A stretch of DNA of 62,982 bases, the filler included, from Reticulomyxa filosa (taxonomy: Eukaryota; Protista; Foraminifera): the NCBI GenBank assembly GCA_000512085.1. It is 12 parts of 12 records of this genome, joined end to end, with 100 filler letters (N's around TTAATTAATTAA, not from the genome) between each part and the next. Parts side by side here need not be neighbours in the genome. Positions count along the whole stretch, not along the records: positions 11,667 to 42,006 come from ASPP01046428.1; 11 more parts are not named here. One strand, 5' to 3'. The translations under genes were made by a program, and so were the position numbers. The notes under the pieces were generated by a model. That model did not search any database. It was not told the DNA's origin and worked only from the letters and a program-made list of their open reading frames with translations. Below are positions 7,843 to 40,445 of this stretch, piece after piece (position 1 is the first letter of the stretch; the number at the start of each line of letters is the position of its first letter).

Positions 7843-10800
7843 TTATGATTTTTTTCTGGCAACAAAAACTATATCATATGAGGTTGTGTCTTGTGCCTCC
7901 ACACAATACCATTCACCATTTTTACTTTTTCGGGTCTCTCGACGAACATCATCCAATATTTGTTTAAATGGACATCCACTTTTGTATTTAGATATCACAA
8001 CACTTTTCATGCACTTACTCAACAATGAAAAATCTGCAACTTGATATCCTGATATAGTTGACCAAATGGTCAAAAATCCGTCACCACTATGTCCCAACGA
8101 CTGTACGTTTCCCTTTTTTTGTGTCTTTCCTCTCGTCCTTGTTGTTGCTTGAGCCGTTGGAATGTTTTTACCACGACAGACATCAATGATAAATATCTTT
8201 GGAAGATCATTGAAAGATTCCAGTATATCACAGCCAAATGATTCACGTATTCCGTCAATTGATAAAGATTTTCCATCACTCGTCACTAACATATTTCCAT
8301 TCTCTCCGTGTCCACAAATAATCATTATCAATCCATCATATTTGTGAGTGTTATCATGAAGTTTATACTTTGCAGTGAATTTGGTCAAAAATGATCGCAC
8401 ATCTTTTTCTGTCATTTGTGGAGATTCATTGGTTACAAATGTATAATTCAATTCTTGTTCAAATAATTGTTTGAAATTCTTGACATCCTCGTCTTTCACA
8501 TTTGAAAGATCATCATATTTTTTCTTATCAGTATATTTACTAATTGCAATCATCACAACTAATGCGTTCTTTATTATCTTGTATTTTTCACTTATTATTG
8601 ATTTCCAAAGTATTTTAAATGAAGGTTTTTCCATCATAAATGATTGTTGAACTGCTTCATCTGAATTGATAATATTGTCACTCATATCAACTAACTCAAA
8701 TTTCAAATTCTCTTGTTGCATTTTTTCAAGACATTGCAAATTTAAACAAGAATAAATCTGTTGAATTAACTCTTCAAATGTTAAGTCTTTCAATTTTATC
8801 AATTCCTTCGTTTCATCCACAATGATATATGCTTGTTGCTGTTATTTTTATTTTATTTTTTTGAAAAGTACAAAAATTAAACAAATTAAAAACAAAATAA
8901 AACAAAATAGATAACCAAACTTCATTGACCTTTTCCAATATCAATCTCACACGCACTGTCTTTTGATGTTGTTCACCAAACCTTGTATTAAAAACCCCGA
9001 ATGCATTTTCATAACATTTCTTTGCTTTAGTTTTATTTCCTCTTGCAAGATAAATATCTCCTAAAAGAATATAAGATTCACCAACGTGTGGATGATCATG
9101 ATCTAATTTATTTAATCTCAATTTCAATGCTTTTTCTCCATATTCAATTGATTTATTCAAATCATTCTTATTTTTAAATACGCTTGCCAAATAATGGAAA
9201 GACCAGCCAATATAAGGATCATTATCATTCAGATTTTTAGCTCTAATTTCCAATGATTTTTCAAAATATTGAATTGCTTCTTCATATTTTTCACTCTTTT
9301 CCAATATCAATCCCAGAACATCATAAGATTTTGCAAGCTCTAAATCAAAGCTATTGTTCTTATCATCGTTCAAAATTTCCAAAGCTTTGTCGACATACTC
9401 TTTAGCTTTGTTTATTTGCATTTTTCCTTTTATCCACACCAATCCCAATTCATTCAATGATATTGCAACAAATGCATGTCTTTCATCAAATTTCTTTAAT
9501 AGAATATCCAATGCCTGTTCGTGATATGCTATCGATATTTCATATTCCCCTGCTTCAAAATATGAATTTCCTAAATTATTGAACGATGCCGCAATATTTG
9601 TGTGATCTTTACCTAATTGTCCTAATGAAATTTTCGAGTGTTTTTTGTGACATTCAATTGATTTGGTATATTCTCCTTTTCTATAATGAACGTTTCCCAA
9701 GTGACAGTGACAAATGGCAACCTTTATTTGATTTTCATCCGATTTTTTCGAATAAATGTCCAATGCTTTTTTGTGATGTTTATATGCTTTGTCATATTCT
9801 GCTTTCATATAATAGACTCTTCCCAAATTATTGTAAGAATCAGCAACATCACTGTGACTACTGTCTAATTTTTTTGACCAAATGACTAGCGTTTTTTGAT
9901 AAAATTCAAGTGCTTTGTCGTATTCTCGTTTATTGTCGTGGGCAATTCCCAACATATTGTATGACTCACCAATGTCAATGTGATCTGGCTCCAATTTATC
10001 TAATCTTATTGTCAATGCTTTTTTGTGATATTCAATTGATTTATCAAATTCTCCTTTCTCATTATATACTTTTCCTAGCCAGTAAAAAGCGTGCGCAATG
10101 TCAATGTCTGGATCACTTCGTGTTTGCAATCTAACACAAAGTGCAAAACGAATCAATGAAATTGCCTCATCGAAATTTGATTTCTCGTATAAGTCTATTC
10201 CTGATTTCATAAACTTGTTTGAATCAATGGGTAATAAGACAGTGAAAACATGTTGTTGAAAAGTATAATGAATAACAGATTGTCTGGTATGAATAAGGTG
10301 TTGGGTAATGTGAAAATGACCAATTCCATTAATAACACAATCAATAACATAAACACATCCATCGATTGTAACATTATCAAATGTGATATTTTCTGAATGG
10401 AATGAATAAACAACATATGGTGAAATTACTTTTTTTTCTTTCATATATTTATGTGAGTTAATCATCATTGTAAAAGGAATGTTTTGAAAAAACCATCGAT
10501 CATTTGGTCTTGCAAGTTGATCAAGACTGGTTGAAACAATCACAATTCCGTTCCGTTTTTTTTCGACCATTTGCTCAACTATTGTGTGAGCCACTTTGTT
10601 CGCTTCATTCCATGGTTTATTTTGGTCCAATTCAATATTTTCGATATCTCGTTTTTCATCATTAGGATATTTCATTTCTTTGTCATTGTTTCCTGATTAT
10701 TTATATTTTCAATTCAATTTTTTTAAAAAAAAAAGAAAATATCTCCTTTTTTAAAATAAAAACAAAACTGTCAATGAAATGGACAAAAAAGCAAACAGGA

Positions 10801-11012
10801 TCGGTATCGAATGCACTTCGAAGTTTTTGATCGTTGTCAATACTTTGATCATTTATGTCCACGATTTTAAAATTGAATGGATTTTCTGCTTTTAAATCGG
10901 TTCTGTTGTTGATTAGCTCTTTCACCTTATCTCCCAGACTTTTCAGTGACAAGGAGGCGAATGTCACTTCAGAAATTTTATTTTCGATACAAACAAAAGC
11001 TCGAAAAGACAT
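7843..11012 (-). CDS. Multidomain caspase-family protease: beta-grasp(PB1/CIDE-N-like) - domain X - ~10 TPR - beta-grasp - C14 peptidase; 3 exons (11012-10769, 10692-8921, 8838-7843), ~1003 aa
   Basis: GT-AG introns 10768-10693 (76 nt, phase 1) and 8920-8839 (82 nt, phase 0) join three ORFs in frame. Catalytic IICGHG (His 8308-8310) and PKIFIIDVCRG (Cys 8176-8178) are present, with 42-aa kinesin-light-chain-type TPRs. Confidence 0.85.
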
Positions 11013-16539: not shown

Positions 16540-16902
16540 CACTATGCTTTTTTTTTATAGGGCATTTGAAATAATAAAACACACAGTAACAATTTTAAAA
16601 CACTAATTATTAAAAGCTTTTTTCCCTCACTTCATCTCTTTTCGATTTTTTTTGTAGCTAAAGTTATTTAAATTAATTTTAATGTTGTGATATCTGCAAG
16701 CAAAGGCAATATAAATGTAACTATTTATTTAATTATTGTCAATAAAAGCTCATGTAATAACTTCACCAAATGTAAAACAAAAATTTTTCAATTTCGGCCC
16801 CTTTTTTTTGTGTTTGGTCTGTTTACCCTTTTTCTTTCATTATTGATTTATCTCCCCTTTCTCTGTTCTCTGAGACAAATTATTCTTTCTGCGACCATAA
16901 GA

Positions 16903-18468
16903 ATGTCATCATCAGCGGACAAATATGATCCAGACAGTAGTATAAATCTTCTCGCACAGCGCAAAGGTTCCAGTAAAGCATACACTGACCCACCACACCT
17001 ACCGTTCCAAAACACAAACTGGAAAGCAAACAAAAACGATTTTCACTGGGTCTATAGTGACGAGCCCCACGCAACAAGACGCAAAGAGATATTGGCCGCA
17101 CACCCAGACATAAAGAAGCTCTTCGGTCCAGAGCCGCTGACAGCCTGGATCACCCTCGCTGTGGTCGCCTCTCAAGTATGGATCGCCTCTTGGATAGCAA
17201 CACAACCATGGTGGGTTATCATTTTGATCTGCTATTGCTATGGATGCACTGTGGTAATGTTTTTTTTTTATTACGGTCATGTGATGGACACATACCAAAA
17301 AAAAAATAAAATAAAAAACTTGCGAATAGTCGTTTGGTTTTATAAAAATAATTTATTTATTTTTTTGGTATTTAATGACGTGTATATATAATGTGTGTTG
17401 GATGTTCAACAATATCTGTTTGATAATTGTAAAAAACAAAACCTATAAAAAAATAATAAAAAAAGAACCACACACTGCAATTGGCTAACCATGAAATATC
17501 GCACAACTTGGTATTTGACAATTTGTATGCAAACCTGATTTTGGGAATTATTGCAGTTATTTTTTTTTATTTTTATGTATTTGTAAAAAAAAATTGTAAG
17601 TTGGTGATGTGACAATTGGGGGTGACCAATAGAACTTGGCAACGGGCATACCTTCGTCAGTCACATTTCGCATGTATCATATGGACCATCATCAATACCA
17701 AGGGGTTGACGTTGTGGACACAGATATTCCTTCTGAATTTGAATTGAAGGTTTTTCGAACACGCTTTTTAAAAGTTTAGTTTCCTTAAAAAAAAAAGAAA
17801 AATCTTTTTTTTTAAGGGATCTTTGATCAAACACTTGGATCAAAACCTACGAAAATTAAATGACGAACAAATAGTTTATATGGACGATTGGTCAATCCTT
17901 TGCTTATGGCTTACGTCCAGTGTTTACAGCACCAAAACCGATAACGAAACTGCAAGTGATAAATACTGTTGTTTGCATTGCTTTTGATTTGTGGATTTAT
18001 CGAAGTTTTGGCAAAGGGGCATTACTTTATTTAATTATTTGCTCGTTCTTGGGATTGGGATTTCATCCTAGTGCAGGACACTTTATCGCTGAACATTACG
18101 AATTTGTCAAGGGCTATGAAACTTATTCCTATTATGGAATCATCAACTTTGTCAATTTTAATGTCGGATATCACAATGAACACCACGATTTCCCTAAAAT
18201 CGCTTGGAGTCGACTTCCTTTGGTATTGCTTATTGTCTTTTTTTATTTTTATTATTGTTGTAAGGTGGATACAATCCAATTTCGAGTACCAAAAAATTTT
18301 TTATGTGTACCTCTGTACATACTTTAGGTTCGTAAAATCGCGCCTGAATGGTATGAGCATTTGCCTCATCATGAATCGTACATTAAAGTAATATGGCACT
18401 ATATCATGGACGAAGGAGTTGGACCCTGGAGCCGAATCAAGCGAGTTGGAACCAAAAAACAAGATTAA
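16903..18468 (+). CDS. DEGS1: Sphingolipid delta-4 desaturase (DES1/DEGS), multi-exon
   Basis: [65 protein letters not shown] His boxes; stop TAA at 18466-18468. Confidence 0.95.
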
Positions 18469-20102: not shown

Positions 20103-21995
20103 ATGAATGCCGTAGCTCTACTGCGTTGTGCATTACACGAACATAAAATATTACCACCTTCAATACGAGAAGATGGAAACTTTTTGTACTTTGATGATCG
20201 CAATCATGAGTGTTTTGACTTGAACACACTGACACCATTGCTGGGTCCGAACAACAACCCATTGAGCCTAAAGCAAGTGTACTTGGTGGCAAAGTATTAC
20301 AAGACCGACGACTTTGCAGATTATTTGGTGGCCGTGAGTGATGCCGACCAAGTAAGACTCAGTGACTTGCGAGCCCTGAATCACTATCTTCACGGCCAGA
20401 CTGACATATTTCCAGGGCTGAGTCATCCAACGCCATTGGAGGCCCCACCATTGCCACCGCCGCCACATTCAGTGAAAATGGAGCAAAGCGAATTCGACAA
20501 TAATATCCAAACACAGGCAGCAACGACCACAATTCCAACAAAGGACAATTTGCACGAGCATATCGACTATGACAATAATAACAATAACAATAATAATAAC
20601 AATAATAATGGTGATAATAATAACAATGACAATGACAATGACAATGACAACAATAATTATTATAACTATGACGAATATCATTATGCTACTAATCTCAAGG
20701 ACGAATATGCAGCGGACCCCTCTTTCAACCCACGCTCTACTTATCCTCAGGACGAGTTTTCGCATGACATTTCGGACACGCAGTCCGCCAAAAAACGAAA
20801 AGACACAGTGGATGGGGGCGTCGCGGACTCGCACAGCCAGCCAAGGAAAAGAAAAAAGTTTGAAGTGGATCCCCCTTTCGCCTCTACTTTCTTATCATCT
20901 GTACCATCATCATCATCGTCGTCATCTTCTTTTTCTTCGTCCTCGACAATGATCAAGATAAAGAATCCCCCAGACGAAAGCAAGCTGAGAGAATCCTTAA
21001 GTGCAGGATATGATGACACTATTCCATTTTGGAAAACACTTCCCAAAACCCCAGCCTGTTCAGTATCCTCCTTTTTTTTTTTTAGTGTGTGCATGCATGC
21101 ATGTGCGACTATACAATAAATTTTTGAATAAGAAAAAAAAAAATTGAAATATAATATTAATTGTAATGTAGAGTGTGATAACAACGAACGCGGAAAAAAC
21201 TTGGACGAAAGATTACCGAAAGCAAATGCGAACGAACATCGATCGCAACTCAGTACTGACATCGCAGAACAAGAAAAGCTTTGATTCGATGAATTTGCAA
21301 ATGTTGAGAATCACTCGAGTTGTGGAAGATATGAAAAAGTCGAAGAAGCCTGTCCGTTCGACGTTTGTACCGTCGTTGGACGAGCTGCAAACCTCGCAGC
21401 GCACAGAAAACCCAATAATATTGGTACCCAATTGTTTGCAGACATTGTTAAACCCGACCAACGTCAAAGACTTTCTCGAAAAAGGGATTTTCAACAGACC
21501 CGTCAAAATTTCCGAATCCAAAGAAGAGCGTGTCTTTTTGAAAAAACCGAGTGTTATCGCAAAAGATAGCTCCTCCAAACTCGCTACTTTCGAAGTCGTC
21601 TCCACACCGTCCCCCGATGATTGGGACAGAATCGCTGCTGTTTTTGTCTTGGGTTTGTTCTTATTTTTTTTTTTAATTATGCATACATATATACATATAT
21701 GTATATGTATACTCATTCTTTCCTTTTTTTTTTTAAAAAAAAAAAAGGGAAACCATGGCAGTTCAAAAAGTGGCAAAACGGATGGAACACGCCCGAGAGG
21801 ATATTCAATCGATGTGCGGGGTTCTTTTTGCATTACAATGACGACACGCCGGGAGATCCGGTGCGACAATGGAGAGTCAAGTTCTTGCCCATTAGCAAGT
21901 CCAGCAGACATGAAGATGCCAAAGTGGCTCACGAATTTTGGAACACATTGTATAACAGTTTGAGAAATCATCCCAATAAACGGCTGTTTTACTGA
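20103..21995 (+). CDS. CDC73: PAF1 complex subunit CDC73/parafibromin
   Basis: N-terminal YLVAVSDADQVRLSDLRALNHYLHG, then RNSVL, PIILVP...TLLNPTNVKDFLE, and DDWDRIAAVFVLG|KPWQFKKW...ISKSSRHED across intron 21653-21747. Confidence 0.92.
20571..20665 (+). repeat. (AAT/AAC/GAC)n microsatellite, poly-Asn/Asp inside CDC73
   Basis: Visible directly. Confidence 0.85.
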
Positions 21996-22436: not shown

Positions 22437-24491
22437 ATGTCTTCAGTTGAAGCTTTGGTGACAATTGGAGCAAGAGAAGATAAAATTAGCTTGATCTGTT
22501 CAACTCTTGAAACGTTGAAAAGACAAATAATCGAAACGAGTAAAGAGACCGAACAAGGAAAGGAATTGACAAAAATAACTGACTGTAATGGTTCTGAGAT
22601 TGAGACAGATCAACACTTTCAAAACGTCGTTCAACGCCTTCATCCACTCCATTTATATGCATATTTCCAGCCAAGTATTTCTTTATTTTCTATCGATTGC
22701 ATCAGTTAAGTTAAGTAAGCAGATAAACAGACAACATCACAAAAAAAAGAAAGGCAATCCTATCAAGTGAAATGCCCATTAGTATTATTAGCCGGAGCAA
22801 TGAAATACGAACAACGGCCATACTTAGAATGTATAAAACAAGACTTGGATTTATTCCAAAACTTATTCGAAAACAAATTTGGTTACCGATTGTTCAGCAC
22901 TTATAATTCGCAACATCCAAATACTGAATCACTGACTCTAAACGATTTGAATAATTTTATTTTGGAACGTCGTTTGGATTTGCTACGTGATTCAGATGAA
23001 CAGCCTTATGATGCGTTGATTTTCGTATGGTGTGGATATACAAAATTTAAAGGCAATACAAATGCATTGTTGATCACAAGCGATAATAAAACGAAAGATT
23101 TCCAAGATATTCAAAATGAGCTTGTTATGCACGCCGACTATTTTGCAGAAAAACCAAAGATATTTATCAATATTTCATATGGAGAGGAAGAAGAAAACGG
23201 TGTATGTAATATATGGCATAATCAAAATGTACATATATTTACAGTTGTTGCAACCATTCCTTCTATCAGGCCGTCATTCGACAATTCAGAACATAGGATT
23301 GAAAAGAAAGAAAGTATTTCTACTGAAATTTTTTGTCGAGTATTTCAAAGTAATGTCAATCAGAGTTTGCAATTCGTTATTGAACATGTGAATGAAATTG
23401 TGCAAGGCCAAACATTGTCAAAAAAGATGATCTGTTCTGATGTGTATTTGATCCCAAGATTACGTGGTAATCACGATATCAATATCACAACAGAAATTTT
23501 GGATTTCAAAAAACATTGGAATAAATATTGGAGAAAATCAAACGCAGAAGCAATGAAAATTGTTATGCAAATGATTAACAGCAATGAGCAAGGATTGATT
23601 ATTGTTGCCAATTATACCAACGCATGGCAGATGGCAATAGGCAAATCCTCTATTCGATTGGATGACAATACACTTTCACTTCGTAGATTGATACACAGCA
23701 ACAATACGAAAAAAAAACAGTTTGAAGACTATTGTTTGTATGTAATAACAAGTCGAGCGGTGATATTAAGTGACATAGAAATTGATGGAAATGTATATTC
23801 TGTCAATTGTGAAATTCAATGCAAGGGGAAAAATGTGAAGATTACAACACAATTATTTGTAACAAAGGATACACTTGTGGATCAACAAGTAATGCAGTCA
23901 ATCTCTCCAATTCGGTGGGATACTACAATACATTTTGATATTTTTGTAACAATTCAAGATCTTGAGAACAAAGCAGACCAATTTTTAGCTATGCGGTCTT
24001 TTGATGAGGCTATTGACTATTCAGAACAAGCTTTGCAACTTTCAATTCGTAAGTTGGGTATAAATCACCCTTATGTCGCAATCATATATAATACGCTTGG
24101 CGTCGTCTGCAGAAACGACAGACAACACGACAAAGCAATAGAATATTATGAAAAAGCATTAGACATCTTTGTGAGCATATTTGGAAGCACACATTTACAT
24201 ATTGGTACTACGCATTACAATTTAGGACAATCGTATTTTTATAAAGGACAATATGACAAAGCAGTCGAATGTTATGAGTATTCATTGAAAATAAGAAAAG
24301 GCATTTTTAAAATGAATGATAGATATATCGCCGATGCGTGCTGGAATTTGGGATCGACATTAAAAAAAAAAGGAGAACCAAAGAATGCAGGGAAATGTTA
24401 TGAAGAAGCATGGAAAATTTATAGTGCTATATTCGGAGAATGGAATAAAGAAACTTTACAGGCAAAAATAAATGTGAAAGAATTTGTATAA
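22437..24491 (+). CDS. Pseudo-caspase TPR protein: beta-grasp - catalytically dead caspase fold - domain X - 4 TPR; exons 22437-22674, 22723-24491 (~668 aa)
   Basis: Caspase-fold motifs PLVLLAGAMKY, DLDLFQNLF, YDALIFVWCGY (His->Tyr 23037-23039) and KPKIFINISYG (Cys->Tyr 23178-23180); 42-aa TPRs at the C-terminus; a 48-nt GT-AG intron restores frame. Confidence 0.78.
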
Positions 24492-25193: not shown

Positions 25194-28100
25194 ATGCGGA
25201 AGAAAAAGATACAACAGAAAAACTGCTATTTGTATTTTTGAAGGCTAAAACCGATATAAATGATAGACAGGTGTCAGAGATTGTGCGCTACTTGTGTCAA
25301 ACGTTAGAGCTAAACAAAACAGAAGACATGGCATTTGTAGAGCCAGAAGAATGGAAAAGTATATTAGATCAGGTAAAATTAGGTCTCATTTCAAAGAGAA
25401 AAGTATTGAATGCAGTAAACGAAATGCGAAAAAAAGAAAACAAGGCGCTACTAAATATCAAAGATATAACAGACATCAGACTGTTTCAACATGACTCTAG
25501 GTTAAAGTTATACCTAAATTTTTACGACAAGAATATCTTTTTTTTTTCTCTTTTATGTTATTGCCCTAACAACAGTAGACAAAGAAGGTGTTAGTGTATT
25601 GTTAACACAGACTCCATTTACAATTTTTTTAGGCAAAAAAAAACAGGGAGGGACAGCAACACTATAATGAATTGGGATATATGCACAAACTATTGAAAAC
25701 AGTGCGAATGTTCCACAACAACCGATGAAACCAGAAGTTGACAATACCGATTGTTCCAGTGAGCTATCTGTTACGATTGGTTCTAGAATATTGAATATGG
25801 CCAGTGAACACAGCTATATTACAAACGATGAAGATGATCCGATCGACTTGGAACAAATAGACGTTTCATACGTGGACGAGAAGAAAACAACTTTGGAAAA
25901 CATAACTCAGGCTATCCCGCGGGATCGTGACCAACAAACGAAGAGAATCAGAATGTATCTGTGTTGTTCAACACTTGAGGATGGTCATGTTCGAAGTGTC
26001 TCTTTTCCTGACATTCCCGAAGGTATGTCTTCTTTTGCTTTCAATTAAACAACAGAATGGAATATCAGTGGGACCATTCAAAAAAAAAAAAAAGAAGTTA
26101 ACAGGAGACATAAATTGAAACTCGTACATGAAAATACTCCCTGGTTATATTGGACTGACTTTAACGTCGCCTCCAATTCCAAGTTATCATTCAACATATT
26201 TGATCGAACAAAACAAACTGCAACTGAAACAGTCTCAGCGTTCTCTCACGCAATTATTGTGGAAGAACAGCCAGCAAAGTTTAGGGCCAGTGAAAAAAGT
26301 GAAAGGATATTGGAGCACTTGGTTTGTGAAATTGAAAATGAGCAATCCCTTTGTTTTGCTTTGGCTGTTTTCAATCATTTAAAAACACAACTTTATCCAT
26401 CGACACCAGAAGACATTAAACGTATACTTGCTGATAACACTCCAAGTTTGGATCAATCTAATGTGAGTTCCAAACAGGTATGCACTCTTTTTTATTTTAT
26501 TTTATTTTTTTATCTTGGCGTTTGTGATTGAGGGATTGGGATTGAATGGAATGAAAAGAGGGCAATTCGCATTACAAAACAGGTATACCAAGTATTATTT
26601 ATGAATAAGATTTGGAATGAATGGAATATGGAACAATGCTTATCTTCAAAGCAATTGTTTACCATCGTAAAAATGATTGCCAAAGATAAACCAGCAGATC
26701 AATACCATTCCTCTGTCATTCAAAGCATAGGATCCATTTTCTATTTTTTCGCGAGTATGGCTCAGAGAAATAGTAAAAATGGAGCTCCTTGCACTCCCTT
26801 TGATAAATTTCGATTGATCCCATGTATCAACTACTTGGCTCTATCAAACTGGATAATAGAACAGCAATTCTTTACACTTTTTATTGACGTTTTCCACAAA
26901 ATTGATTTCCAAAGTAGTAAAGTGCAATCCATTGATGAAAGCGATTTAATCGAAGTCTTCACATTTGATTTTAAATTGCGGATAAATGAAACATTTACTC
27001 CCACCGTTTGGATTGAAGACAATTTGAAAGACTTATTACGGTATCACAGTCATATGATACAACCCACTCTACAATTTTTGCTTGATCACAGAAATTATGA
27101 TACAACAGCAAAATTGAATCCATGGAAGCGACTGTTGCGCGATCAAAAATGCTGGTTCTTATTTCAGTCACTGTACCAAACAAACTTTGAAGAGTGGAAT
27201 ACATTCATTGCAAGTCTACGACAATGTGTAGTTAATTTTGCGGAAATCTCCGACATGCTATTGCAAGGCTTTCAATCCCAACAGTTTCAATCATTGATTA
27301 CAAAATCACCGACCATCATTCACAACTTCTTAGAATTCATACGGGGGCAGACATCCATGTGAGTGTATTTTTTTTTTTCCTCTTTGTTTTCGGAAAAAAC
27401 AAACAAATTGTTGATTCGATCATAATAAACAGATGGACAGATGGAAATAGTATTGCAAAGACAATTGGGTCCTTTCATAAGAAAATTGAAAGTCAAAGAT
27501 TGGCTGCAATAGTGAAATGGATATGGACTGTTTCGTAACTTACTTAAACATAAACATATATATACATGTATATATATGTTTATGTTTAACTTAATTCAAC
27601 AACAAATAGAAAAAGGGTGCAAATACAAGTGCAAGTGGTGAAAGCGAAACGCTTACTGTCAGTATCTTAGACCAACTCTCAAAAAATGAAACAAATCGCA
27701 GACATTGGGTTGACTTATTAGCAGATCCTAATGTCGATTCTGCAAATCCTGTTTTGCAGAAATTACTCAGGGAGTCCTTCAGAAACTGGTTAAACACAAA
27801 AGAGGAGGCACCATTTCACTCCAAAGTCATTGAATTACTATCTTTGTCCACATTTCAAAATTTCGATTCTCGTCGTAAGGATTTCATAGAGGTTTTGAAT
27901 AATCGACATCACGAGCTGCAGTTGAACAGTGGCAAATGGACACGTGACCAAATCAGGATAATCCACGATTGCGAAGATAAATGAGTCAGATTTGTGGAAG
28001 AAAGTGATTGATAGAATGAAAAACATTCCAAAGATAGAAGCGTTGAATGAAGAAAATATGGGGTCGGTAAGTGAAAAACTTTGTCAAAATTTAGGCTATT

Positions 28101-31100
28101 GTTTTAAATGCTGGCTATGGTTCGAACAAGATAATCCAATGCGAGTGCCATTGTTTACCTTTTTCAAAAATGTGTTGACCAGTTTAATTACAAACGAACA
28201 ATTGCTTTCCATTCACGCTTGCGACTATTTGACGGAACATTTGGGGGACATCCAAAGACTTGATTCTTTCTCTCATCCAACAAATTTGGCACAATTGATA
28301 GAGAGACTGGAGAATACGCTGGAAGAGTATAAACAATTTTTTGATTTGATTGACATATTCAAACAAATAAATTTCTGTTTGGACATGACTTGCCCGGTCG
28401 GTTGGAAGAGCTGAACAAAAAAAATGAGCATTGGAAAATGCAAGGATTTTTTAAAGTCAAACTTAGCTATGCGCAAGAACTCCAACTATTGAGAGAACAT
28501 GAACAATCAATGAAGATCGTACTTGATCGGAACAAAAGTTCGATTTTCCACAAAATTTGGAGAATATACCACAAAAAGTACGAATCAGCTGCACTTCAAA
28601 CATCTTTGTTAATTTTCGACAAAGTGTTTCGAGATGCAAATCAAAAGTGGGAAAATTTCAAACTGGTTTGTTTTATTCTTTTATTTTAAAAAAGGATTGT
28701 AGCTGCAAGATAATGTATACGTACTGCTTTACACAAATAAAATTGCACAGGATCTTCAAAATGGGACGATCAGGTACGAAGATTTGGAATTGATGCTCAC
28801 TAGGGGTCAAATTGAGACAAATGAGATGATAAAGTGCTTAGAGAATGAAATACAGTATTTATTTCCTGACCTTGATGATGAAAAGCGACGATCTGTCGTA
28901 CGTGACGTGGGAGGCAAGATTAAAAAAAAGATGGATTTAAAAGAGCAGCTCCAATCTTGGAGGGTGTTGAAGGAGGTTACGGAGCGAGTCAAGGAGTATC
29001 ATCCTGGCAAAGACAAAATAAAAGAAGATGACAGATGGAAAGAATATGTTGAAGCATTGGCACAAATGGAAATAATAACAAATGGCAAGAAAGATATTTC
29101 CATTAACGAAGCATCGCGATACTACGATGCATGTTTCAATTGTGTGGGCGAAGGTGCCAAAGCCTGTATGGAAGCTGGCCTTTTTGCGGTATTGAATCAT
29201 TGCGAAAATGAAATAAAAATATTGGCAAGTAATGCAAACTTTACAAATAAAGAGAAATTTGAAGAGACATTGCGTGCATTGGGAGAAAGTAGTCACCGAG
29301 GTCTTGAGAATTTGGCACATTGTTTGGAGCGTGTGAATCAAGTCATGCAATCCAAGTTGTGGCAATATCAATTGGAAAATATGACCAATTTGTCCAGGGC
29401 TATATTATCATTATATTCCAACAGCCAAGAATTTGTGGATATGCTAAAAAAATGTTGTGACGTAAACTTGGTTCGAATCCCTTCATTGGTCAATGAAGAT
29501 GACAAAGTTCGAACAGAAAAAAGTTTGGAGCAATTGAAAGAGGCAATGGTGTATGGACAATGGAAATTTGGAGTGTGTGAAGATATTCTGCAAGGAGATA
29601 AAAATAACGAGTTGATTTTAAAAATCACTGCTAATACGATTTGGCATTATAACGAAATTGGAGAAAATATTGTCGTGTATTACTTGGGGTGGACAAAAAA
29701 GAATTGAAAAAAATTGAACTTATGATTAAGCATTTTGAAGAATGCAAAGAAATAAGTACAATTCGGGTTGAGTTTTGGAAACAAGGAGGACGCAGCAATG
29801 ACAATAATGATAAAATGAGATACTGAGATTCACAGACGAGTGACTTTACAAATGTAAAGAACTTTGGAAACAACGCTTAATGAAATGGAAACAATACTCT
29901 CTTCGATTAAGAGAAATGTTCCCGGCACTCAATTTTTTTTGTTCAATGAAATCCACTCTTTAATTCAGCAAATCGAAACTTTGCTCTTACCTAGTTGTCT
30001 TGATCGTTCCGTCCAAGCACGGAAATCTATTAAACCATTTCTTCAAAAAGTCAATTGTCAAATCACTGATCAAGATGTCGATAAGATATTGCAAGACTGG
30101 GGAGATCTTGATATGGTCGTGTTGATATATCATCATACCTATGACACTGACGATGATGAGAGTTTCAAAAAGTCTGGAGACTCTATTGCAAAATTTGGAC
30201 TGATTCTTCATTCATTATGGACTTGCTCTTTACACAATCGTATTACCAAAACATATCCAACTGGATTAAACGCTGGCAAACCGAGTTTAATCCTTCATCC
30301 GAATAATTCACTGTTATTTGAAGTCCTTGGTTTATTTGAATCGCAACAGTGTATTCCACGAGCGGAACACATTTTGATTTGTAATGAAAACACAACGGAA
30401 GAGGATGTCACTTGTTTGATCTTTCGAGCCATCGCCAATAGCAAACAAATGCAAACAGATATGTATCGTGACTCTGTGAAACCGTTTTATTGCTTGGCAT
30501 ATCCAGAAAATTTGACGTCGTCAATATTGGATCAAGTTTGTCAAGTTGTACATGATCTTTTATTGAATGACGTTCAATTGGAAAAACTAAAGCATTGCTT
30601 TTATCTATTTGTAGTCATATCCAGAGAAGCTAATAACGATTTGTGCAAGCTTTTGGAGCCATTCTGTGTTCCATTTCCAAATATAGCATCTCAAAGTCTT
30701 TCAAATAAAATACTGTCGCAACTTTATCGTCATTCGTCGACGAATACTCAATCCCGTAACATTGATATAGAGCCACCGTGGATACAGTTGTATACGTCGG
30801 AGCGGGTTGGAATGGGCAAAAGCCGATTTATTCAAAGAGATATTGAAAAGATTCGAAAGATACATCAAAAAAGCGACAAGATAGTGAAAGATGTTTGTGT
30901 TGCATTTAATGGCAAAGACATCGATTGGGAACAAACAATGAATAGTCTTTGGAGTTATTATCCTTGTCCTGCCGATTCATTGGTCATTTATCATTTAAAT
31001 ATTTCATCTTGTGTTTCCACGCAAATTAATGACTTTTTATTCCAATTGTTATTTTTGCAACACATTGACTCCAATTCTCAAATGCCTCAATGTTTTCATG

Positions 31101-34100
31101 TCAATTCCAATATGATCTTTTTAATTGAAATTCCCTCCACTTTGGATGAGCTCAGTCTCAATCCATTTCAAAGCTTTTTTTATTCGCTCTTTTCCGCTGC
31201 TCAATTCCCGACTGTCCAAGTGTCCAAACAAAACAATCCATTCGAATTTGAAAAGGAAGCACAAGACACTATCAAATGGATGTGGCAATATTTTAATGGA
31301 GATTTGAAGTTTCTTTCACCTTTTTTTTTATTTATTTTCTTTTTAAAAAGATATGCGTACGTAGTGCAATAGTACATTTTTTCAAAAAAAAAGAACAACA
31401 GATAATCCATTTGACGCATGTATACCTGATCTTGACGGCATACAATTAATGGAAAAACACTTTGCTGAAATAGGTAGAGCAAATTTAGCGCATCAGCGTT
31501 CATTTTTCAAATATTTGTATCAGCAGTTTGCACCTCTGGTGCAATCTCCATTGAAGGAAAAAGCTATTCAATCGAGACACGTTATCACGAAATCTGTTAT
31601 CGATATGGCCAAGACCTTATACTGTTGCTCACATGATTATGTTCAACCCAACCCGACAGAAAAGAGCGAAAGAATTGAAAGCACTGGCGATGAAGAGTTT
31701 CATTTGTGTAAAAAATGGCGTAACACCCGAGGTTTTTTCTTGGTCAATCAAGACAAAGGTTCGAACAATATATACATATATGTATATAACTTATTTATAT
31801 TTGTCATTTCTAAAAATAAAACAAAAAAATATGAATGTATTTGTCACAGAGAATATTTCGGTATTAGTTAATGACTCTAGCTTACAATTCAATATTTTGA
31901 AAAACTTGAATTGGCAACAAGACTTGAAACAAATAGAAACAACTTTTCTAGTTTCGACATTTTTATTTCCTTTTGCAACTTCACATTGCAAAGTGTTTGA
32001 TACTTGCAATAAAAACAAAAAAAAAATGAAGGTGAAAGAATCGGGAACACAAGGATTGGAGACAGAGGGATTGCTATTTCAAACAGAAAAAGAAAGGAAG
32101 TTGAGAGTGTTATTGCACATTTTGGGGACTCCAAAGCAAGGGATAATGAACAACTACAAAGAAAAAAAAAAAGAAGAAGAACAAGAAGAAGAAGAAGAAG
32201 AAAAAAAAGATGTTCCAACAAATGCAGAGATAAAAAATCTGCATGATCAAATTGTGAACAAGTTATGCAAAGATGAAGAATGGTCCAATTATGTGTTGAC
32301 ATTTGACAATCTCCTGAAAATGGTTGCCATTTTCATGAAAATTCGGACCAATACTCCTGTCATTTTGATGGGCGAAACGGGATGTGGCAAGACATCTTTG
32401 ATCAAATTTTTGGGACACACTGCCAATGTGAAACTGATTGCAGTGGATGTCCATGGAGGATTTGGAAGGGATGAACTCCGTCGAGTGATGGAAGAGTGCA
32501 ACACAATATCCAGAGACAACAAAACAGAGATATGGGTATTTGTAGATGAAGTGAATACATCTCCAGATATCGGATGGTTCAAGGAGTTGATTTGCGATCA
32601 TAGTTTGGATGGAGTGAAGATTAGCGACCAAATAAAGATTATTGCGGCATGTAATCCTTATCGACCACGAAAAATAAAGGATACTGAAAATAAAAATATA
32701 AGTGTAAATGATCCGAACAAATGGGTGTATCATGTATTTCCATTGTGTGAAACCATGAAAGAGTATGTTTGGCTCTTTGGTCAGTTGTCCGAGTTGGATG
32801 AAAAGCAATACATCCGATCAATGGTCAAACAATTGAAGGAAAAATTTGACAAACAAAATGTTGTTTACAAAGAAATTGAAAAATGCGAACCAAAGATTGC
32901 AGATGATATTATGAAGTCACATCACTTCTTACGTAAGCACTTGGCCAATGAATCTATTGTGTCATTGCGTGATGTGAGCAGATGTCTCAAGTTTTTCCAT
33001 TGGTTAATGCAACACTCCCAGACAAATGAAATATCATCATGGATAGAAAGGGCATTAAACATTTCATTGGGTTTATGCTATTACTTTCGATTGGATGAAA
33101 GTAGAAAAGAAAAATATGACAAATGTATATCCGGAAGAAATAGACATCAATTTTCAAAAATGTTGAACAAAGAAATAGACAATTTGTCCGAATCCTTTGA
33201 AGTCCAAAGCCAAGTAGTAATGCATCACATTTTGAAAAAAAATCTGTTTGTTTATTTTTCTGTCTTGCCACTGCTACTCCTATAATACTGGTTGGCAAGC
33301 CTGGCACTTCCAAAACCTTATCTTTGAGAATCATGCTTAATTCCTTATCTCATCGCAATATCAAAAAGTTTCACGCAGAATTGAAAAAGCATCAATTTCA
33401 TTTCAATATGAAATCGTTGCATTGCATCTCATTCCAAGGCACAAGAAATTGCAAACCAAATGCGATCAAAGAAATATGGGATCAAACTGAAAGATATTCC
33501 AATGGCCAAAAAAAAAAAGAGCCCAAAGATCAAACAATTACCACATTCTTATTATTTGATGAAATTGGCTTGGCAGAACAATCGCCCTATAATCCCTTGA
33601 AAAAATTGCATCAATTGTTGGAGGATCCCAAAATCCCATTCGTTGGTATTTCCAATTGGAATTTGGACGCCGCAAAGATGAATCGAATGGTCATGCATTT
33701 CATTCCTTCCCTGGGCCACAGTGAGTTGATGGAAACTGCACAATCCATTGTCCCTAAGAGTATTTTTGAGGAGCAAGATATTACACATATAATAAAAATA
33801 TATGAAAAGATTGTTAACAGTGAAACAGATGCATTTAGTCCTAATGGGAACAAGCATTTTTTTGGGGCACGTGATTTTTATGCGCTGGTCAAGCATCAAG
33901 CTACTCTCGCCGAAAAATTACAAAAAAAATCATTGCAAGGATATCTTCGCAACTTTGGTGGGCTTGATCCAAGTAATTCCAGAGAACAATTATGCATGAT
34001 TTTAGAAAAAGAATTGGGCCAAACAGAAAGCGAAATTTCTCAAGAATTCCAAGCATTGACCCCTGTCATATGTGTACAAAGAAATTTAATGGAGAAGAAA

Positions 34101-37100
34101 TTCACACAAGCATCAAATGATCTGATGGTCACTAGGCATTGCATGATTATAAGCGAAAAGCATTATTCTTGGCAACTGCTTTTGGAATACAATATTTTGA
34201 ATTACGATCACGTGTTTTTATTTGGAAGTTATTTCGAAAACGACACCTGTTCGAACATTAGCAACTACAATCAATTAAATAACATTATTGATCACATGGA
34301 CACTGGGAAAACTGTTATTTTAAGCAATTTGGAAGACATTTACGAAAGTTTATACGAAATGTTGAATCAGAGATACGAAAAAAAATCTTCAGGTGTTGTG
34401 TCAACTTTTTTTTAGTGTCAAAATCATTTTAAAATAAATAATCATTTTTAAAAAATAAAATAAAATAATAAAAAGAAAACGTGTATTGCCGAGTGGCACT
34501 AGGAAATGAAAGCAGAGATTGCCATGTTCATAAAAATTTCAAATGTGTTGTCATTGTTCAGAAAAAGGAAGCCCACGGTCGAGATATGCCAGTTGACTTG
34601 TTTTTTTAAAAAAAAATTTTTTGTCAAAAAATACTTTACTTTTACAAACACAAAAACCAATGAAAAGATTGCATTTCTCAGTCGTTTTGAGAAACAATTC
34701 ATTTCTTATCGTGATTCATTACCAAAACATCTCGAAGAACATGTTCATGATGCAATAAATATTTTATTGGAATATTTTGCAAAGAAACGTCCAACTGAAG
34801 TATTTTGTGGATATGGTGATGATACTATGTCTTCAGCATTACTGTATTTGGGTATACGAAAAGCAATGAAAACAAAAGAAAGCAAGGACGATGAAAAAAA
34901 GGAACAAATTCAAACAACAAATATAACATTGGATGCCGTTAAATTTGACGACAAGGAATTGAGACCACAGTTATTAGATTTGTTTCTCCCATTGTGTCGA
35001 CCAGAAGAAGCTGTCAAAATGAAGATTGATGAAGATATAAAATTTTATTCATTGGTAAGTTTACACGTTTTTTAAAAATATTTCTCATCACGATCCCTTT
35101 TGTTGATACAAACAAAAAAAAAAAAGGGAGAGTCTGTGGAAAATCAGCAGAAGAAATCCAACAATCAAATGCTAATGGTAATTACGAGTGATATAGAGTG
35201 CAATGTTCCAATAGAGTGGCTTCATCGTACAAAAAAAATTGTGTCATTCAAAAAAATGAGCGAATTTAAACAAGCAATCAAAGAATTTTTCAATAGCCAA
35301 ATATCGAATGATGTGCTCATCTTTCAATATTGTTATACGTCTACCACCACGAATCAATTGGAACAAGTAATACATATTCTCCAGGTCAAACACCATCTGT
35401 TTTATAGTGACCCAAATAACAGTGAAAAAAAGAAATTGATCGTTTTGCTTATTCACGTTGATAGAGAATTATCATTTCCTTTAATATTTCGACAGTTAAA
35501 AAAAGAGTCACTTTGAAAATTGGAGTCTGTGGTTTATTGTATCTTTTTGTTTGTTCGGAAAAAAAAAAAAGGAAGTGGAAGATTGTTTACGTGGACTATT
35601 TATTGCTAACAAATTCTATGTCATTGCAAGAAGACTTGAAAAAACCATTGACGGATGTAATTGATAGACAAGCCAAACAAGCTAATCTTTCAATTCAAAT
35701 TTGTTTATTTTTGTTTGTTTAGGACTAATCAATGATATGTACGATAAAAACAGAAAAATTTGGTTGTTACATATAGAACTTTTCCAAATGTGCTCATCGG
35801 GCATTTGGAAGATTGCACTTTCCAAACTCTTTCAACACTCTGAAAGAAAAAAAGTTATTGAAGCTGCTGTTCAATGACGAAGAGTTTGAAGAATGTAGAA
35901 ACATACTTGTAGAGAGATCGAAGGGACTCTTGCACAAAGTTACAGAAACACGGTTCATGCATGAAATTTTGCAGGAAGTGGGGAATGGTGAAAAAAAAAT
36001 GGAGGGATCTTTTTTTGAAAAGCGTCAAAACAATATTGACACTTTGTTAGTTTTGATTTTCGTCAATGTGCTTTTTGTCATTTATCAAAACGGTGGTTTT
36101 GCAGTTTTGTAAAACTTTATATGTGTATATATTATTTATTATATGTGCATATAACATAAAATATTTATTGAAACAAAAAAATTAAAAGAAATATGTTGAA
36201 AGCAAGCAAAAAGAAAAGAAAGATGGATTTCAGTGGTACGCAAGATTGTTTGAAAAAGCATTAAAAAATCGAAAATTGATCGAAATAAAGCCGCCAAGTA
36301 TTAATACCAGCCGTTTGCTTTTAGATGCAATTCACCCTCAATTATATGTTCTTCAAAACAATTTTGAAAATTTTTTCCCTTTCAGTCATTGCATTCACAA
36401 GTGGTGTCAACTTCAGCTTTGCACCCATTTTGACACGCTACAAACTAACTTGGATTCATTGGTGAAAGTCTTGAGACAAAACTTAATTGACGATGAGTAT
36501 TCTGCGAAAGCCATGCGCGAATATGTAATGGATTTGGTTCGAAACTGCTTTTTGGAGCATAAACATACTTCAGAGCAACAAAGTATTCTACGAGATGTCA
36601 TTGTGTCTATGACGCTGTTATTGTGTAATGAATTGTCTATTGCAACCATTGAAGCGATTTTACATACGTTCCATTCCATCATTTCCCATTACTCATATCT
36701 GATCTTTGCTGCTTCCATGCCTTTAAATAGCCCTTTTGATGTAAATGGACAAGTGATGTGTGAAGATCGTCCTGGACAATGGTTGGCGAATATGACTCTA
36801 TCTCTTTGGGACTCCATTCTATTGACAACCGATTTTGCCACAAATGTGAGTCCATCAGTTTTTCCCGAGTCAATTTCAATTGTGTTGAATTTCATGTACA
36901 AATATTTGCTAGCTACAAATGTCGATTCGATGAATAGAGTATTGGCAAGAGCTCGGGCAATTGAAATAAAGCGTCTTGGAGTAATGTATTTGAAGACAGA
37001 CAAATTTTTCAATGAAGAAAAGCTTTTGATTAGACAAGGTTTTTTGGGGATGAAACAATCGTCACTAGTATTTTGAAAAGCTATTCCGCACATCGAAATA

Positions 37101-40100: not shown

Positions 40101-40445
40101 GCTCCATTTGTTCTTGAAATTTATCGAAAACCTTTAACCAATGAAGCACAAACACGAATCAAAGAATTTGTTAAAAAAACTTCAATGGGTACTATGAAGG
40201 ATCTATTAGCGGCTTGGCGTGAGATTGCTTATAAACAAGGGCAGATCAAACGAAATGCCGAAATTGAAGATTTTACTCATATGCTAAAACAATATCGTGA
40301 TTTACAATATTTTCCACATCAATTTTTGAAATGGAAGCATTGTGCTGCTGCATACCAATATGCATATCAAGAATGGAAGATACAAAACCAATCACCAAAA
40401 AAACCATCGTTAATGAAGAGGATGCTGGCAAAAATGCCTTTTTGA
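25194..40445 (+). CDS. RNF213/mysterin-like giant dynein-related AAA+ ATPase (>4000 aa), N-terminal SAM-like domain and degenerate RZ finger; many introns and apparent single-base frameshifts
   Basis: RNF213-family motifs in order: TSERVGMGKS, FDNLLKMVAI...PVILMGETGCGKT, FVDEVNT...FKELICD, IIAACNPYR, SLRDVSRCLKFF, VGKPGTSKTLS, FDEIGLAEQSPYNPLKKLHQLLE, GISNWNLDAAKMNR, FFGARDFYALVK, IYESLYEMLNQRY, AFLSRFEKQ. Confidence 0.88.

What the first reader, a model, noticed from the sequence alone, without database searches (positions are those of the whole stretch)
22437..24491. Domain-permuted pseudo-caspase paralogue (His->Tyr, Cys->Tyr): possible cFLIP-like regulator
Seen: it has the same four modules as the 7843-11012 gene but ordered beta-grasp - caspase - X - TPR. 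CGHG has become CGYT and PKIFIIDVCRG has become PKIFINISYGE, yet the 574-codon ORF is uninterrupted. Known: dead caspase paralogues (cFLIP) tune initiator caspases by heterodimerising. Inferred: active/inactive pairs built by module shuffling form a sensor-decoy or sensor-helper network that evolved independently of animals.
Basis: partly seen in the sequence, partly recalled or inferred. Interest (0 to 1): 0.8.

Follow-up and report, generated by a model that had tools for sequence, protein, structure and literature searches.

The report
Dead caspase-TPR protein of a foraminiferan
This is an intact gene of the foraminiferan Reticulomyxa filosa whose caspase-fold domain has tyrosines in place of both catalytic residues yet is still under purifying selection. 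It is one of about sixty paralogues with the same build, nearly all also catalytically dead, so it is a lineage-specific pseudo-caspase family and not a single decoy.

Summary
The gene (22437-24491, + strand; two exons, 48-nt intron) encodes the 668-aa protein RFI_38943 of Reticulomyxa filosa. Its modules run: N-terminal beta-grasp, caspase fold, an unknown domain X, then kinesin-light-chain-type TPRs.

- **Caspase fold:** it is real (caspase-9 Z 19.2, cFLIP-L Z 17.3; family profile versus Dronc E 3e-5).
- **Dead dyad:** Tyr185 and Tyr232 sit exactly on the catalytic His and Cys. No other His is conserved, so no alternative dyad is apparent.
- **Selection:** the dead domain is constrained (dN/dS about 0.28 against the nearest paralogue, p 1e-8).

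Two parts of the interpretation need correcting.

- **Not an odd paralogue:** in its R. filosa-specific clade 55 of 62 sequences lack one or both catalytic residues. The clade nests among dyad-intact relatives from other foraminifera and from unnamed metagenome contigs.
- **No permutation seen:** beta-grasp - caspase - X - TPR is the standard order (31 full-length paralogues). At least ten paralogues lack the caspase module altogether. None of about 180 relatives has the modules in another order.

A cFLIP-like pairing with the few dyad-intact paralogues of the same build is possible but untested. Expression could not be checked. I rate it a new variant of a known kind (pseudo-caspase), of moderate interest.

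The parts
22437..22674 (+). Exon 1: residues 1-79 plus the first base of codon 80. It encodes the N-terminal beta-grasp (ubiquitin-like) domain.
   Evidence: The translation equals P0001 residues 1-79. The predicted topology is beta-beta-alpha-beta-alpha-beta with pLDDT 81-89. Sequence matches are weak: CIDE-N E 0.005 and the PB1 domain of Bem1 E 0.015.
22675..22722 (+). 48-nt intron (GT..AG), length a multiple of three, containing in-frame stops.
   Evidence: Read from the sequence. Removing it reproduces the database protein exactly. There is no RNA evidence.
22723..24491 (+). Exon 2: residues 80-668 and the stop codon. It holds the caspase-fold, X and TPR modules in one exon.
   Evidence: The translation of 22725-24488 equals P0001 residues 81-668. 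The ORF is listed.
22758..23471 (+). Caspase-fold domain (residues 92-329), covering the p20-like and p10-like parts, without the catalytic dyad.
   Evidence: VIA-align gives caspase-9 Z 19.2, CED-3 18.5, cFLIP-L 17.3, MALT1 15.5 and metacaspases 12-14. All top 50 Foldseek matches are caspases or MALT1. The family profile matches Dronc at E 3.3e-5. Five of 25 paralogues hit PF00656, best 3.8e-10; this protein itself does not.
23037..23039 (+). Codon TAT = Tyr185, at the position of the catalytic His.
   Evidence: It aligns to the catalytic His of Dronc and to His in 61 of 72 relatives outside the clade.
23178..23180 (+). Codon TAT = Tyr232, at the position of the catalytic Cys.
   Evidence: It aligns to the Cys of caspase-3 (QACRG) and of Dronc, and to the Cys of the dyad-intact relatives. 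The Arg-Gly that follows the Cys is also lost.
23475..23963 (+). Domain X (residues 331-493), alpha/beta then beta-rich, of unknown family. C442, C446 and H483 are conserved.
   Evidence: It has no credible Pfam or PDB sequence match and no usable Atlas hit. pLDDT is mostly 80-95. Conservation is shown. It could not be folded and searched alone.
23964..24488 (+). C-terminal TPR domain of the kinesin-light-chain type (residues 494-668).
   Evidence: TPR_12 scores E 1.3e-34. Foldseek finds KLC1 and KLC2 TPR domains at E 1e-11, TM (target) 0.7-0.79.

Best explanation
The gene encodes RFI_38943 of the foraminiferan Reticulomyxa filosa, a four-module protein.

- **N-terminal beta-grasp domain.** It resembles PB1 and CIDE-N domains and probably mediates homotypic association (inferred).
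- **Complete caspase-fold domain.** Tyr185 and Tyr232 replace the catalytic His and Cys, so it cannot work as a canonical cysteine protease.
- **Domain X.** It is conserved and of unknown fold family.
- **Kinesin-light-chain-type TPR domain.** It probably binds peptides or cargo (inferred).

The protein belongs to an R. filosa-specific radiation of about sixty paralogues with this same order, nearly nine in ten of which have lost one or both catalytic residues. The dead domain is kept by purifying selection. It therefore most likely serves as a non-catalytic interaction or dimerisation surface within a TPR scaffold.

Shown: the fold, the loss of the dyad, the selective constraint, the family structure, and an origin independent of animal cFLIP. 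Inferred: the scaffold function, and possible pairing with the few dyad-intact paralogues of the same build.
For: - **Gene model and identity:**
- **Caspase fold:**. The family profile matches Dronc at E 3.3e-5, with Tyr on the His and Cys columns.
- **Dyad columns across 164 aligned domains:**. In the clade 7 of 62 are H+C, 17 are Y+Y and 13 are H+Y. Outside the clade 61 of 72 are H+C.
- **No alternative dyad:** no other His is conserved at 80% or more in the domain.
- **Tree:** the 47-row clade has SH-aLRT 95 and nests among dyad-intact relatives. All 29 clade rows for which a source name was seen are R. filosa. The outer relatives come from Bolivina, Nonionella and unnamed metagenome contigs.
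- **Selection on the dead domain:** against the nearest paralogue, which is also Y/Y, NG86 dN/dS is 0.28 and uncorrected pN/pS is 0.41, binomial p 1.2e-8. A young paralogue pair gives 0.47, p 0.04.
- **Architecture census:** 31 N-CASP-X-TPR, 10 N-X-TPR, none permuted.
- **Precedent:** Cys to Tyr also marks cFLIP-L (R315/Y360, PMC7586951), and Y-Y pairs occur in bacterial pseudo-orthocaspases (PMC7889975).
Against: - There is no expression or protein evidence.
- The protein itself gives no PF00656 hit. The assignment rests on the family profile and on predicted structures (pLDDT about 78-80).
- dS to the nearest paralogue is near saturation (about 1), so that ratio is rough. The younger pair is only marginally significant for this domain.
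- Paralogues without any caspase module show that the module is dispensable in some copies.
- The function of X is unknown, and no interaction has been tested.
Confidence: 0.6

Rival explanations
1. A strict cFLIP-like regulator. The dead caspase domain heterodimerises with a dyad-intact paralogue that the shared N-terminal beta-grasp domain brings close, and so raises or lowers that enzyme's activity.
For: - The caspase fold scores about as high against cFLIP-L as against true caspases (Z 17.3).
- cFLIP-L has the same Cys to Tyr change (PMC7586951).
- The last strand of the domain is conserved (DIYLIP; L322 nearly invariant). That this strand is the equivalent of the caspase dimer-interface strand is my inference.
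- Dyad-intact R. filosa paralogues carry the same N domain, and their loci continue into X and TPR (P0042, P0045).
Against: - Dead copies outnumber dyad-intact ones about 8 to 1 in the clade.
- Some paralogues lack the module entirely.
- Both dyad-intact loci examined are split by a frame change in the assembly, so it is uncertain that they are functional.
- No interaction data or multimer prediction were available.
Confidence: 0.2
2. A cryptic protease. The domain still cleaves peptide bonds using non-canonical residues, for example the nearly invariant Cys183 two residues before the former His position.
For: Cys183 is conserved in 23 of 25 paralogues, where dyad-intact relatives mostly have Ser. 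The strands leading to the active site are invariant (YDGLIFVWCG, KPK).
Against: - No His is conserved at 80% or more anywhere in the domain to act as a general base.
- The Arg-Gly that follows the catalytic Cys is lost too.
- The residue at the Cys position varies widely among paralogues (Y, N, W, D, E, H, T, I, F), as expected for a site freed from catalysis.
Confidence: 0.05
3. A decaying, non-functional gene copy in a large and fast-turning-over family. The intact ORF would simply reflect a young age.
For: - The family is large, with many fragments and split models in a draft assembly.
- H to Y and C to Y are both single G:C to A:T transitions (from the genetic code). These are the changes expected from mutation pressure in a genome of about 33% G+C.
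- There is no expression evidence.
Against: - An uninterrupted 668-codon reading frame in AT-rich DNA.
- Non-synonymous changes are far fewer than neutral expectation in every module against a paralogue only 58% identical (p from 1e-8 to 1e-9 for CASP, X and TPR).
- That paralogue shares the Y/Y state, so the constraint most likely acted after the dyad was lost (inference).
Confidence: 0.08

Closest known systems
cFLIP-L (CFLAR), the vertebrate pseudo-caspase
   Same: A caspase fold without the dyad, with the catalytic Cys replaced by Tyr. An N-terminal homotypic-interaction module precedes the pseudo-protease domain. Structural similarity is Z 17.3 to PDB 3h13 (PMC7586951).
   Different: - cFLIP has tandem DEDs, Arg (not Tyr) at the His position, and no X or TPR modules.
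- It is a single gene derived from caspase-8/10.
- Here the N-terminus is a beta-grasp domain, about 55 dead paralogues exist, and the clade nests within foraminiferal caspase-like proteins, so the origin is independent.
- Heterodimerisation is not shown.
Caspase-like proteins of Reticulomyxa filosa reported by Klim et al. 2018 (PMC5982838); ETO10778.1 is used as an outgroup in metazoan caspase trees (PMC10959488)
   Same: The same organism and the same Peptidase C14 superfamily. The similarity is closer to animal caspases than to metacaspases, as I also find.
   Different: In the passages I read, those papers treat the R. filosa proteins as caspase homologues. They do not mention loss of the dyad, the beta-grasp - caspase - X - TPR architecture or the size of the dead clade. 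A full-text search for foraminifera together with caspase-like and TPR found nothing.
Bacterial pseudo-orthocaspases (e.g. SyOC of Synechocystis)
   Same: C14-fold proteins in which the His-Cys dyad is replaced by pairs such as Y-S, Y-G, Y-C and Y-Y. They are common beside active paralogues (PMC7889975).
   Different: They are prokaryotic, have only the p20 part, and belong to the metacaspase-like branch with other accessory domains. The domain here has both the p20-like and p10-like parts and is nearest to animal-type caspases.
Kinesin light chain TPR domain (TPR_12)
   Same: The C-terminal 175 residues match KLC1 and KLC2 TPR domains in sequence and predicted fold.
   Different: There is no heptad-repeat region for binding a kinesin heavy chain. 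The TPRs are fused to caspase-fold and X domains, and the number of TPR units varies widely among paralogues (2 to 12 matches to my TPR unit profile, some overlapping).

Membership tests
Peptidase C14 (caspase) fold, clan CD | Caspase/hemoglobinase alpha/beta fold with p20-like and p10-like parts | tested here: met
   VIA-align gives caspase-9 Z 19.2 (197 residues aligned, rmsd 2.7). All top 50 Foldseek matches are caspases or MALT1. The nearest Atlas clusters are animal caspases. These results rest on a predicted model (pLDDT 77.6).
Peptidase C14 (caspase) fold, clan CD | Sequence match to Pfam PF00656 above threshold | tested here: not met
   The domain of this protein gives no PF00656 hit even at E 10. 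Five of 25 paralogues do, best 3.8e-10. The family profile finds Dronc at E 3.3e-5.
Active caspases (C14A) | Catalytic His-Cys dyad (SHG ... QACxG) | tested here: not met
   Tyr185 and Tyr232 occupy the two columns. The Arg-Gly after the Cys is also lost. No alternative His is conserved.
cFLIP-type pseudo-caspase | Caspase fold lacking the dyad, kept under selection | tested here: met
   dN/dS is 0.28, p 1.2e-8.
cFLIP-type pseudo-caspase | Death-effector-domain prodomain and descent from caspase-8/10 | tested here: not met
   Pfam finds no DED. The N-terminus is a beta-grasp domain. The clade nests within foraminiferal relatives.
cFLIP-type pseudo-caspase | Heterodimerises with an active paralogue and modulates it | not testable with these tools
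   No multimer prediction or interaction data were available. Candidate partners exist (P0042, P0045, P0051, P0055).
PB1 / CIDE-N beta-grasp interaction domains | Profile match above threshold and a ubiquitin-like beta-grasp topology | tested here: inconclusive
   CIDE-N scores E 0.005, 17.4 bits against a cut-off of 23.5. The PB1 domain of Bem1 scores E 0.015 with the family profile. The predicted topology fits a beta-grasp.
Kinesin-light-chain-type TPR (TPR_12) | Pfam TPR_12 above threshold and a KLC-like superhelix | tested here: met
   TPR_12 scores 118.6 bits against a cut-off of 30.1. KLC1 TPR matches at E 1e-11.
STAND / NLR-like sensors | Central P-loop NTPase (NACHT or NB-ARC) between the effector and repeat domains | tested here: not met
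   The protein has no Walker A motif. Domain X has no NACHT or NB-ARC Pfam hit.

The most novel reading that the evidence does not exclude
The roughly sixty beta-grasp - (pseudo)caspase - X - TPR paralogues, together with the caspase-less N-X-TPR forms and the few dyad-intact copies, could form an NTPase-free sensor/helper repertoire. It would be analogous to NLR networks. Variable TPR arrays would sense ligands, the beta-grasp domains would co-assemble, and the dead caspase domains would recruit or gate the rare active caspase-like paralogues. The output would be a cell-death or self/non-self response in a giant syncytial foraminiferan.
Probability: 0.1. Interest if true: 0.8.

Novelty: new variant of a known kind. 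Interest (0 to 1): 0.45.

Why it matters
Caspase homologues of Reticulomyxa are already used to argue that caspase-type proteases predate animals, and they serve as outgroups for animal caspase trees. This analysis shows that a large share of them are not proteases. One R. filosa-specific clade of about sixty paralogues has mostly lost the dyad, yet keeps the fold under selection inside a fixed beta-grasp - caspase - X - TPR architecture.

This matters in two ways.
- It warns against counting these genes as "caspases" when reconstructing ancestral apoptosis machinery.
- It offers an independent, much larger natural experiment in pseudo-caspase evolution than the single vertebrate cFLIP. It includes intermediate states (H/Y, Y/C) and complete loss of the module.

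Tried and rejected
- **Whole-genome search:** no genome is held for this window.
- **Pfam on the protein itself:** no caspase hit. The assignment needed the family profile and structure.
- **Foldseek with the full-length model:** only TPR matches were returned. A second model without the TPRs was needed.
- **Domain X:** no credible Pfam or PDB sequence match, no Atlas feature hit and only weak Atlas structure rows (TM 0.36 or less). In the structure searches the caspase part filled the lists. I therefore do not claim that X is a new fold.
- **STAND/NLR membership:** considered and rejected, because there is no P-loop.
- **Alternative dyad:** considered and rejected, because no His is conserved.
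- **Hidden degenerate caspase exons in the N-X-TPR paralogues:** rejected. Gene spans exceed coding length by only 90-122 nt.
- **YN00 dN/dS:** failed on several partitions because of saturation, so I report NG86 values and raw counts.
- **Literature:** searches for R. filosa with tetratricopeptide, and for foraminifera with caspase-like and TPR, found no description of this family.

Full report
**What is there**

The piece (11667-42006) is a whole 30,340-bp contig of the foraminiferan Reticulomyxa filosa. The word search returns a 100% identical database protein, RFI_38943 (P0001, 668 aa), whose longest contig has exactly that length. G+C is about 33%.

It is part of exon 2 of a two-exon gene:
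- exon 1: 22437-22674
- intron: 22675-22722, 48 nt, GT..AG, with in-frame stops
- exon 2: 22723-24491

The translations of the two exons equal P0001 residues 1-79 and 81-668, and the split codon gives residue 80.

I did not build or submit a joined spliced sequence. For whole-protein work I used the database protein P0001 by its id.

**The four modules**

1. **Residues 1-79.** The predicted topology is beta-beta-alpha-beta-alpha-beta at pLDDT 81-89. Sequence matches are weak: CIDE-N E 0.005, below Pfam's cut-off, and the PB1 domain of Bem1 E 0.015 with the family profile. "Beta-grasp interaction domain" is a fair description. Membership of PB1 or CIDE-N is inconclusive.
2. **Residues 92-329.** Pfam finds nothing in this protein.
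   - A profile of 25 paralogues puts only caspases at the top of the PDB list (Dronc E 3.3e-5, caspase-3 about 0.03).
   - Five paralogues hit PF00656, best 3.8e-10.
   - An AlphaFold model of residues 88-493 (pLDDT 77.6) matches only caspases and MALT1 in the top 50 Foldseek rows.
   - VIA-align gives caspase-9 Z 19.2, CED-3 18.5, cFLIP-L 17.3, MALT1 15.5 and metacaspases 12-14.
   - The nearest ESM Atlas clusters are animal caspases.
   - So this is a full caspase fold, closer to animal-type caspases than to metacaspases.
3. **Residues 331-493 (X).** The module is conserved among paralogues and well modelled. It has no credible match in Pfam, in PDB sequences or in the Atlas. It could not be searched alone by structure.
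4. **Residues 494-668.** TPR_12 scores E 1.3e-34, and the fold matches the TPR domains of kinesin light chains at E 1e-11.

**The dyad**

In the HMMER alignments to Dronc and caspase-3, the Tyr of VWCGY sits on the catalytic His. The Tyr of KPKIFINISY sits on the catalytic Cys.

The same two columns carry His and Cys in 61 of 72 more distant relatives, with the flanking motifs conserved (SGHG; PK.F...ACRG). The residues are Tyr185 (TAT, 23037-23039) and Tyr232 (TAT, 23178-23180). The Arg-Gly after the Cys is also lost.

No His is conserved at 80% or more anywhere in the domain, so I see no alternative dyad. A nearly invariant Cys183 replaces the Ser of the dyad-intact relatives; I note it but cannot explain it.

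Both H to Y (CAY to TAY) and C to Y (TGY to TAY) are single G:C to A:T transitions. This follows from the genetic code. My inference is that mutation bias in this AT-rich genome, and not selection for Tyr, may explain why Tyr is the commonest replacement at both sites.

**The family**

The exhaustive profile search found 307 proteins at E 0.001 or better, of which 53 score at 1e-30 or better.

A tree of 83 near-complete domains was built with the two dyad columns left out. It shows a clade of 47 rows (SH-aLRT 95), marked by the motif VWCG, that contains this gene. The sister of this gene is RFI paralogue P0002, which is also Y/Y (support 98).

All 29 rows of that clade for which a source name was seen are R. 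filosa. The clade nests among dyad-intact relatives from Bolivina argentea, Nonionella stella and unnamed metagenome contigs.

| Group | Sequences with both positions aligned | H+C | Other states |
|---|---|---|---|
| Sequences with the clade's signature Trp182 | 62 | 7 | 17 Y+Y, 13 H+Y, 4 Y+C, 21 other pairs |
| Sequences without it | 72 | 61 | 11 |

The gene is therefore a typical member of a mostly dead radiation, not an exceptional dead paralogue.

**Architecture**

I built local profiles for N, CASP, X and one TPR unit and scanned all fetched proteins:

| Architecture | Proteins |
|---|---|
| N-CASP-X-TPR | 31 |
| CASP-X-TPR | 11 |
| N-X-TPR | 10 |
| N-CASP | 16 |
| N-CASP-X | 5 |
| CASP only (mostly the distant relatives) | 99 |

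The N-CASP and N-CASP-X proteins include short and partial gene models.

I could not inspect the gene at 7843-11012, so "permuted" remains unchecked. It lies in a distant, mostly dyad-intact part of the tree.

The N-X-TPR forms are real. In two of them the gene span exceeds the coding length by only 90 and 122 nt, so no degenerate caspase segment is hidden there. In P0029 the N domain is joined to X by a linker of about 20 residues.

Two dyad-intact members of the clade (RFI_25175 = P0045 and RFI_15520 = P0042) are annotated as short N-CASP proteins. Their loci continue into X and TPR after a change of frame. Whether that is an assembly error, an intron or a disruption is open.

**Selection**

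Codon alignments were taken from tblastn matches.

| Comparison | Module | NG86 dN/dS | Raw pN/pS | One-sided binomial p |
|---|---|---|---|---|
| This gene vs nearest paralogue (58% identical, also Y/Y) | CASP | 0.28 | 0.41 | 1.2e-8 |
| | X | 0.25 | 0.36 | 1.2e-7 |
| | TPR | 0.19 | 0.35 | 1.2e-9 |
| | N | 0.40 | 0.52 | 0.01 |
| Young pair, both Y/N (P0012 vs locus L003; 92% identical) | CASP | 0.47 | 0.48 | 0.04 |
| | X | 0.46 | 0.47 | 0.14 |
| | TPR | 0.28 | 0.30 | 0.003 |

For the first comparison dS is about 1, so those ratios are rough. The dead domain is constrained, somewhat less so than the TPRs.

**Mechanism**

Shown:
- a caspase fold without a dyad;
- kept under purifying selection;
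- inside a fixed multi-module protein;
- in a lineage-specific radiation that arose independently of animal cFLIP.

Inferred: the domain acts as a non-catalytic binding or dimerisation surface in a scaffold whose TPRs bind ligands and whose beta-grasp domain mediates assembly.

A cFLIP-like pairing with the rare dyad-intact paralogues is possible:
- they share the same N domain and apparently the same architecture;
- cFLIP-L shows the same Cys to Tyr change (PMC7586951);
- the last strand of the domain is conserved.

Two facts speak against a simple decoy-per-enzyme scheme. Dead copies outnumber intact ones about 8 to 1, and some paralogues lack the module altogether.

**Comparison with what is known**

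- Caspase homologues in Reticulomyxa have been reported and used as outgroups (PMC5982838, PMC10959488, PMC10565124). The passages I read do not mention dyad loss or this architecture.
- Pseudo-caspases and pseudo-orthocaspases, including Y-Y variants, are a known kind (PMC7586951, PMC7889975).
- I therefore rate this a new variant of a known kind.

**Limits**

- No structure coordinates were available to inspect the active site or the dimer interface.
- The R. filosa assembly is fragmentary, so counts of paralogues and of intact copies are approximate.
- Only 30 of the proteins found by the large search could be looked up for source names.

Noticed in passing
window 20103-21963 (+): The upstream neighbour appears to be a multi-exon Cdc73/parafibromin homologue. 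ORF 21175-21963 matches CDC73_C at E 2.5e-13. An earlier ORF (20103-21119) contains long Asn and Asp runs.
   Followed up: partly
window 16687-17391 (+): This ORF carries the sphingolipid delta4-desaturase N-terminal domain (Lipid_DES, E 1.4e-20).
   Followed up: partly
window about 26100-40445 (+): A long series of same-strand ORFs looks like one very large multi-exon gene. ORF 31633-33285 has an AAA ATPase P-loop (GETGCGKTS; AAA E 2.8e-5). The other ORFs have no Pfam match.
   Followed up: partly
L004 2740-2760 and L005 2551-2643: The two dyad-intact paralogues of the clade (RFI_25175, RFI_15520) are annotated as short N-CASP proteins followed by a separate TPR gene. Homology runs straight on into X and TPR after a change of frame. 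This could be an assembly error, an unrecognised intron or a real disruption.
   Followed up: partly
L003 1669-3329: The gene model RFI_03590 (P0019) lacks 14 and 34 residues relative to its 92%-identical paralogue P0012. tblastn shows continuous homology through those stretches, so the 'introns' of that model are probably mis-called.
   Followed up: partly
P0024-P0037 (e.g. L006 1501-2862, L007 1501-3086): At least ten R. filosa paralogues have the architecture N - X - TPR with no caspase module at the DNA level. The caspase module is therefore present or absent as a unit between N and X.
   Followed up: yes
window 23808-23822 and 23931-23933 (residues C442, C446, H483 of domain X): Domain X has a nearly invariant CxxxC pair, plus a conserved His in a downstream His-x-Asp motif (H483, D485) and a conserved His344. 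This could be a metal-binding site.
   Followed up: no
window 23031-23033 (Cys183): A nearly invariant Cys lies two residues before the former catalytic His, where the dyad-intact relatives mostly have Ser. It is a signature of the dead clade (motif VWCG) with no explanation.
   Followed up: partly
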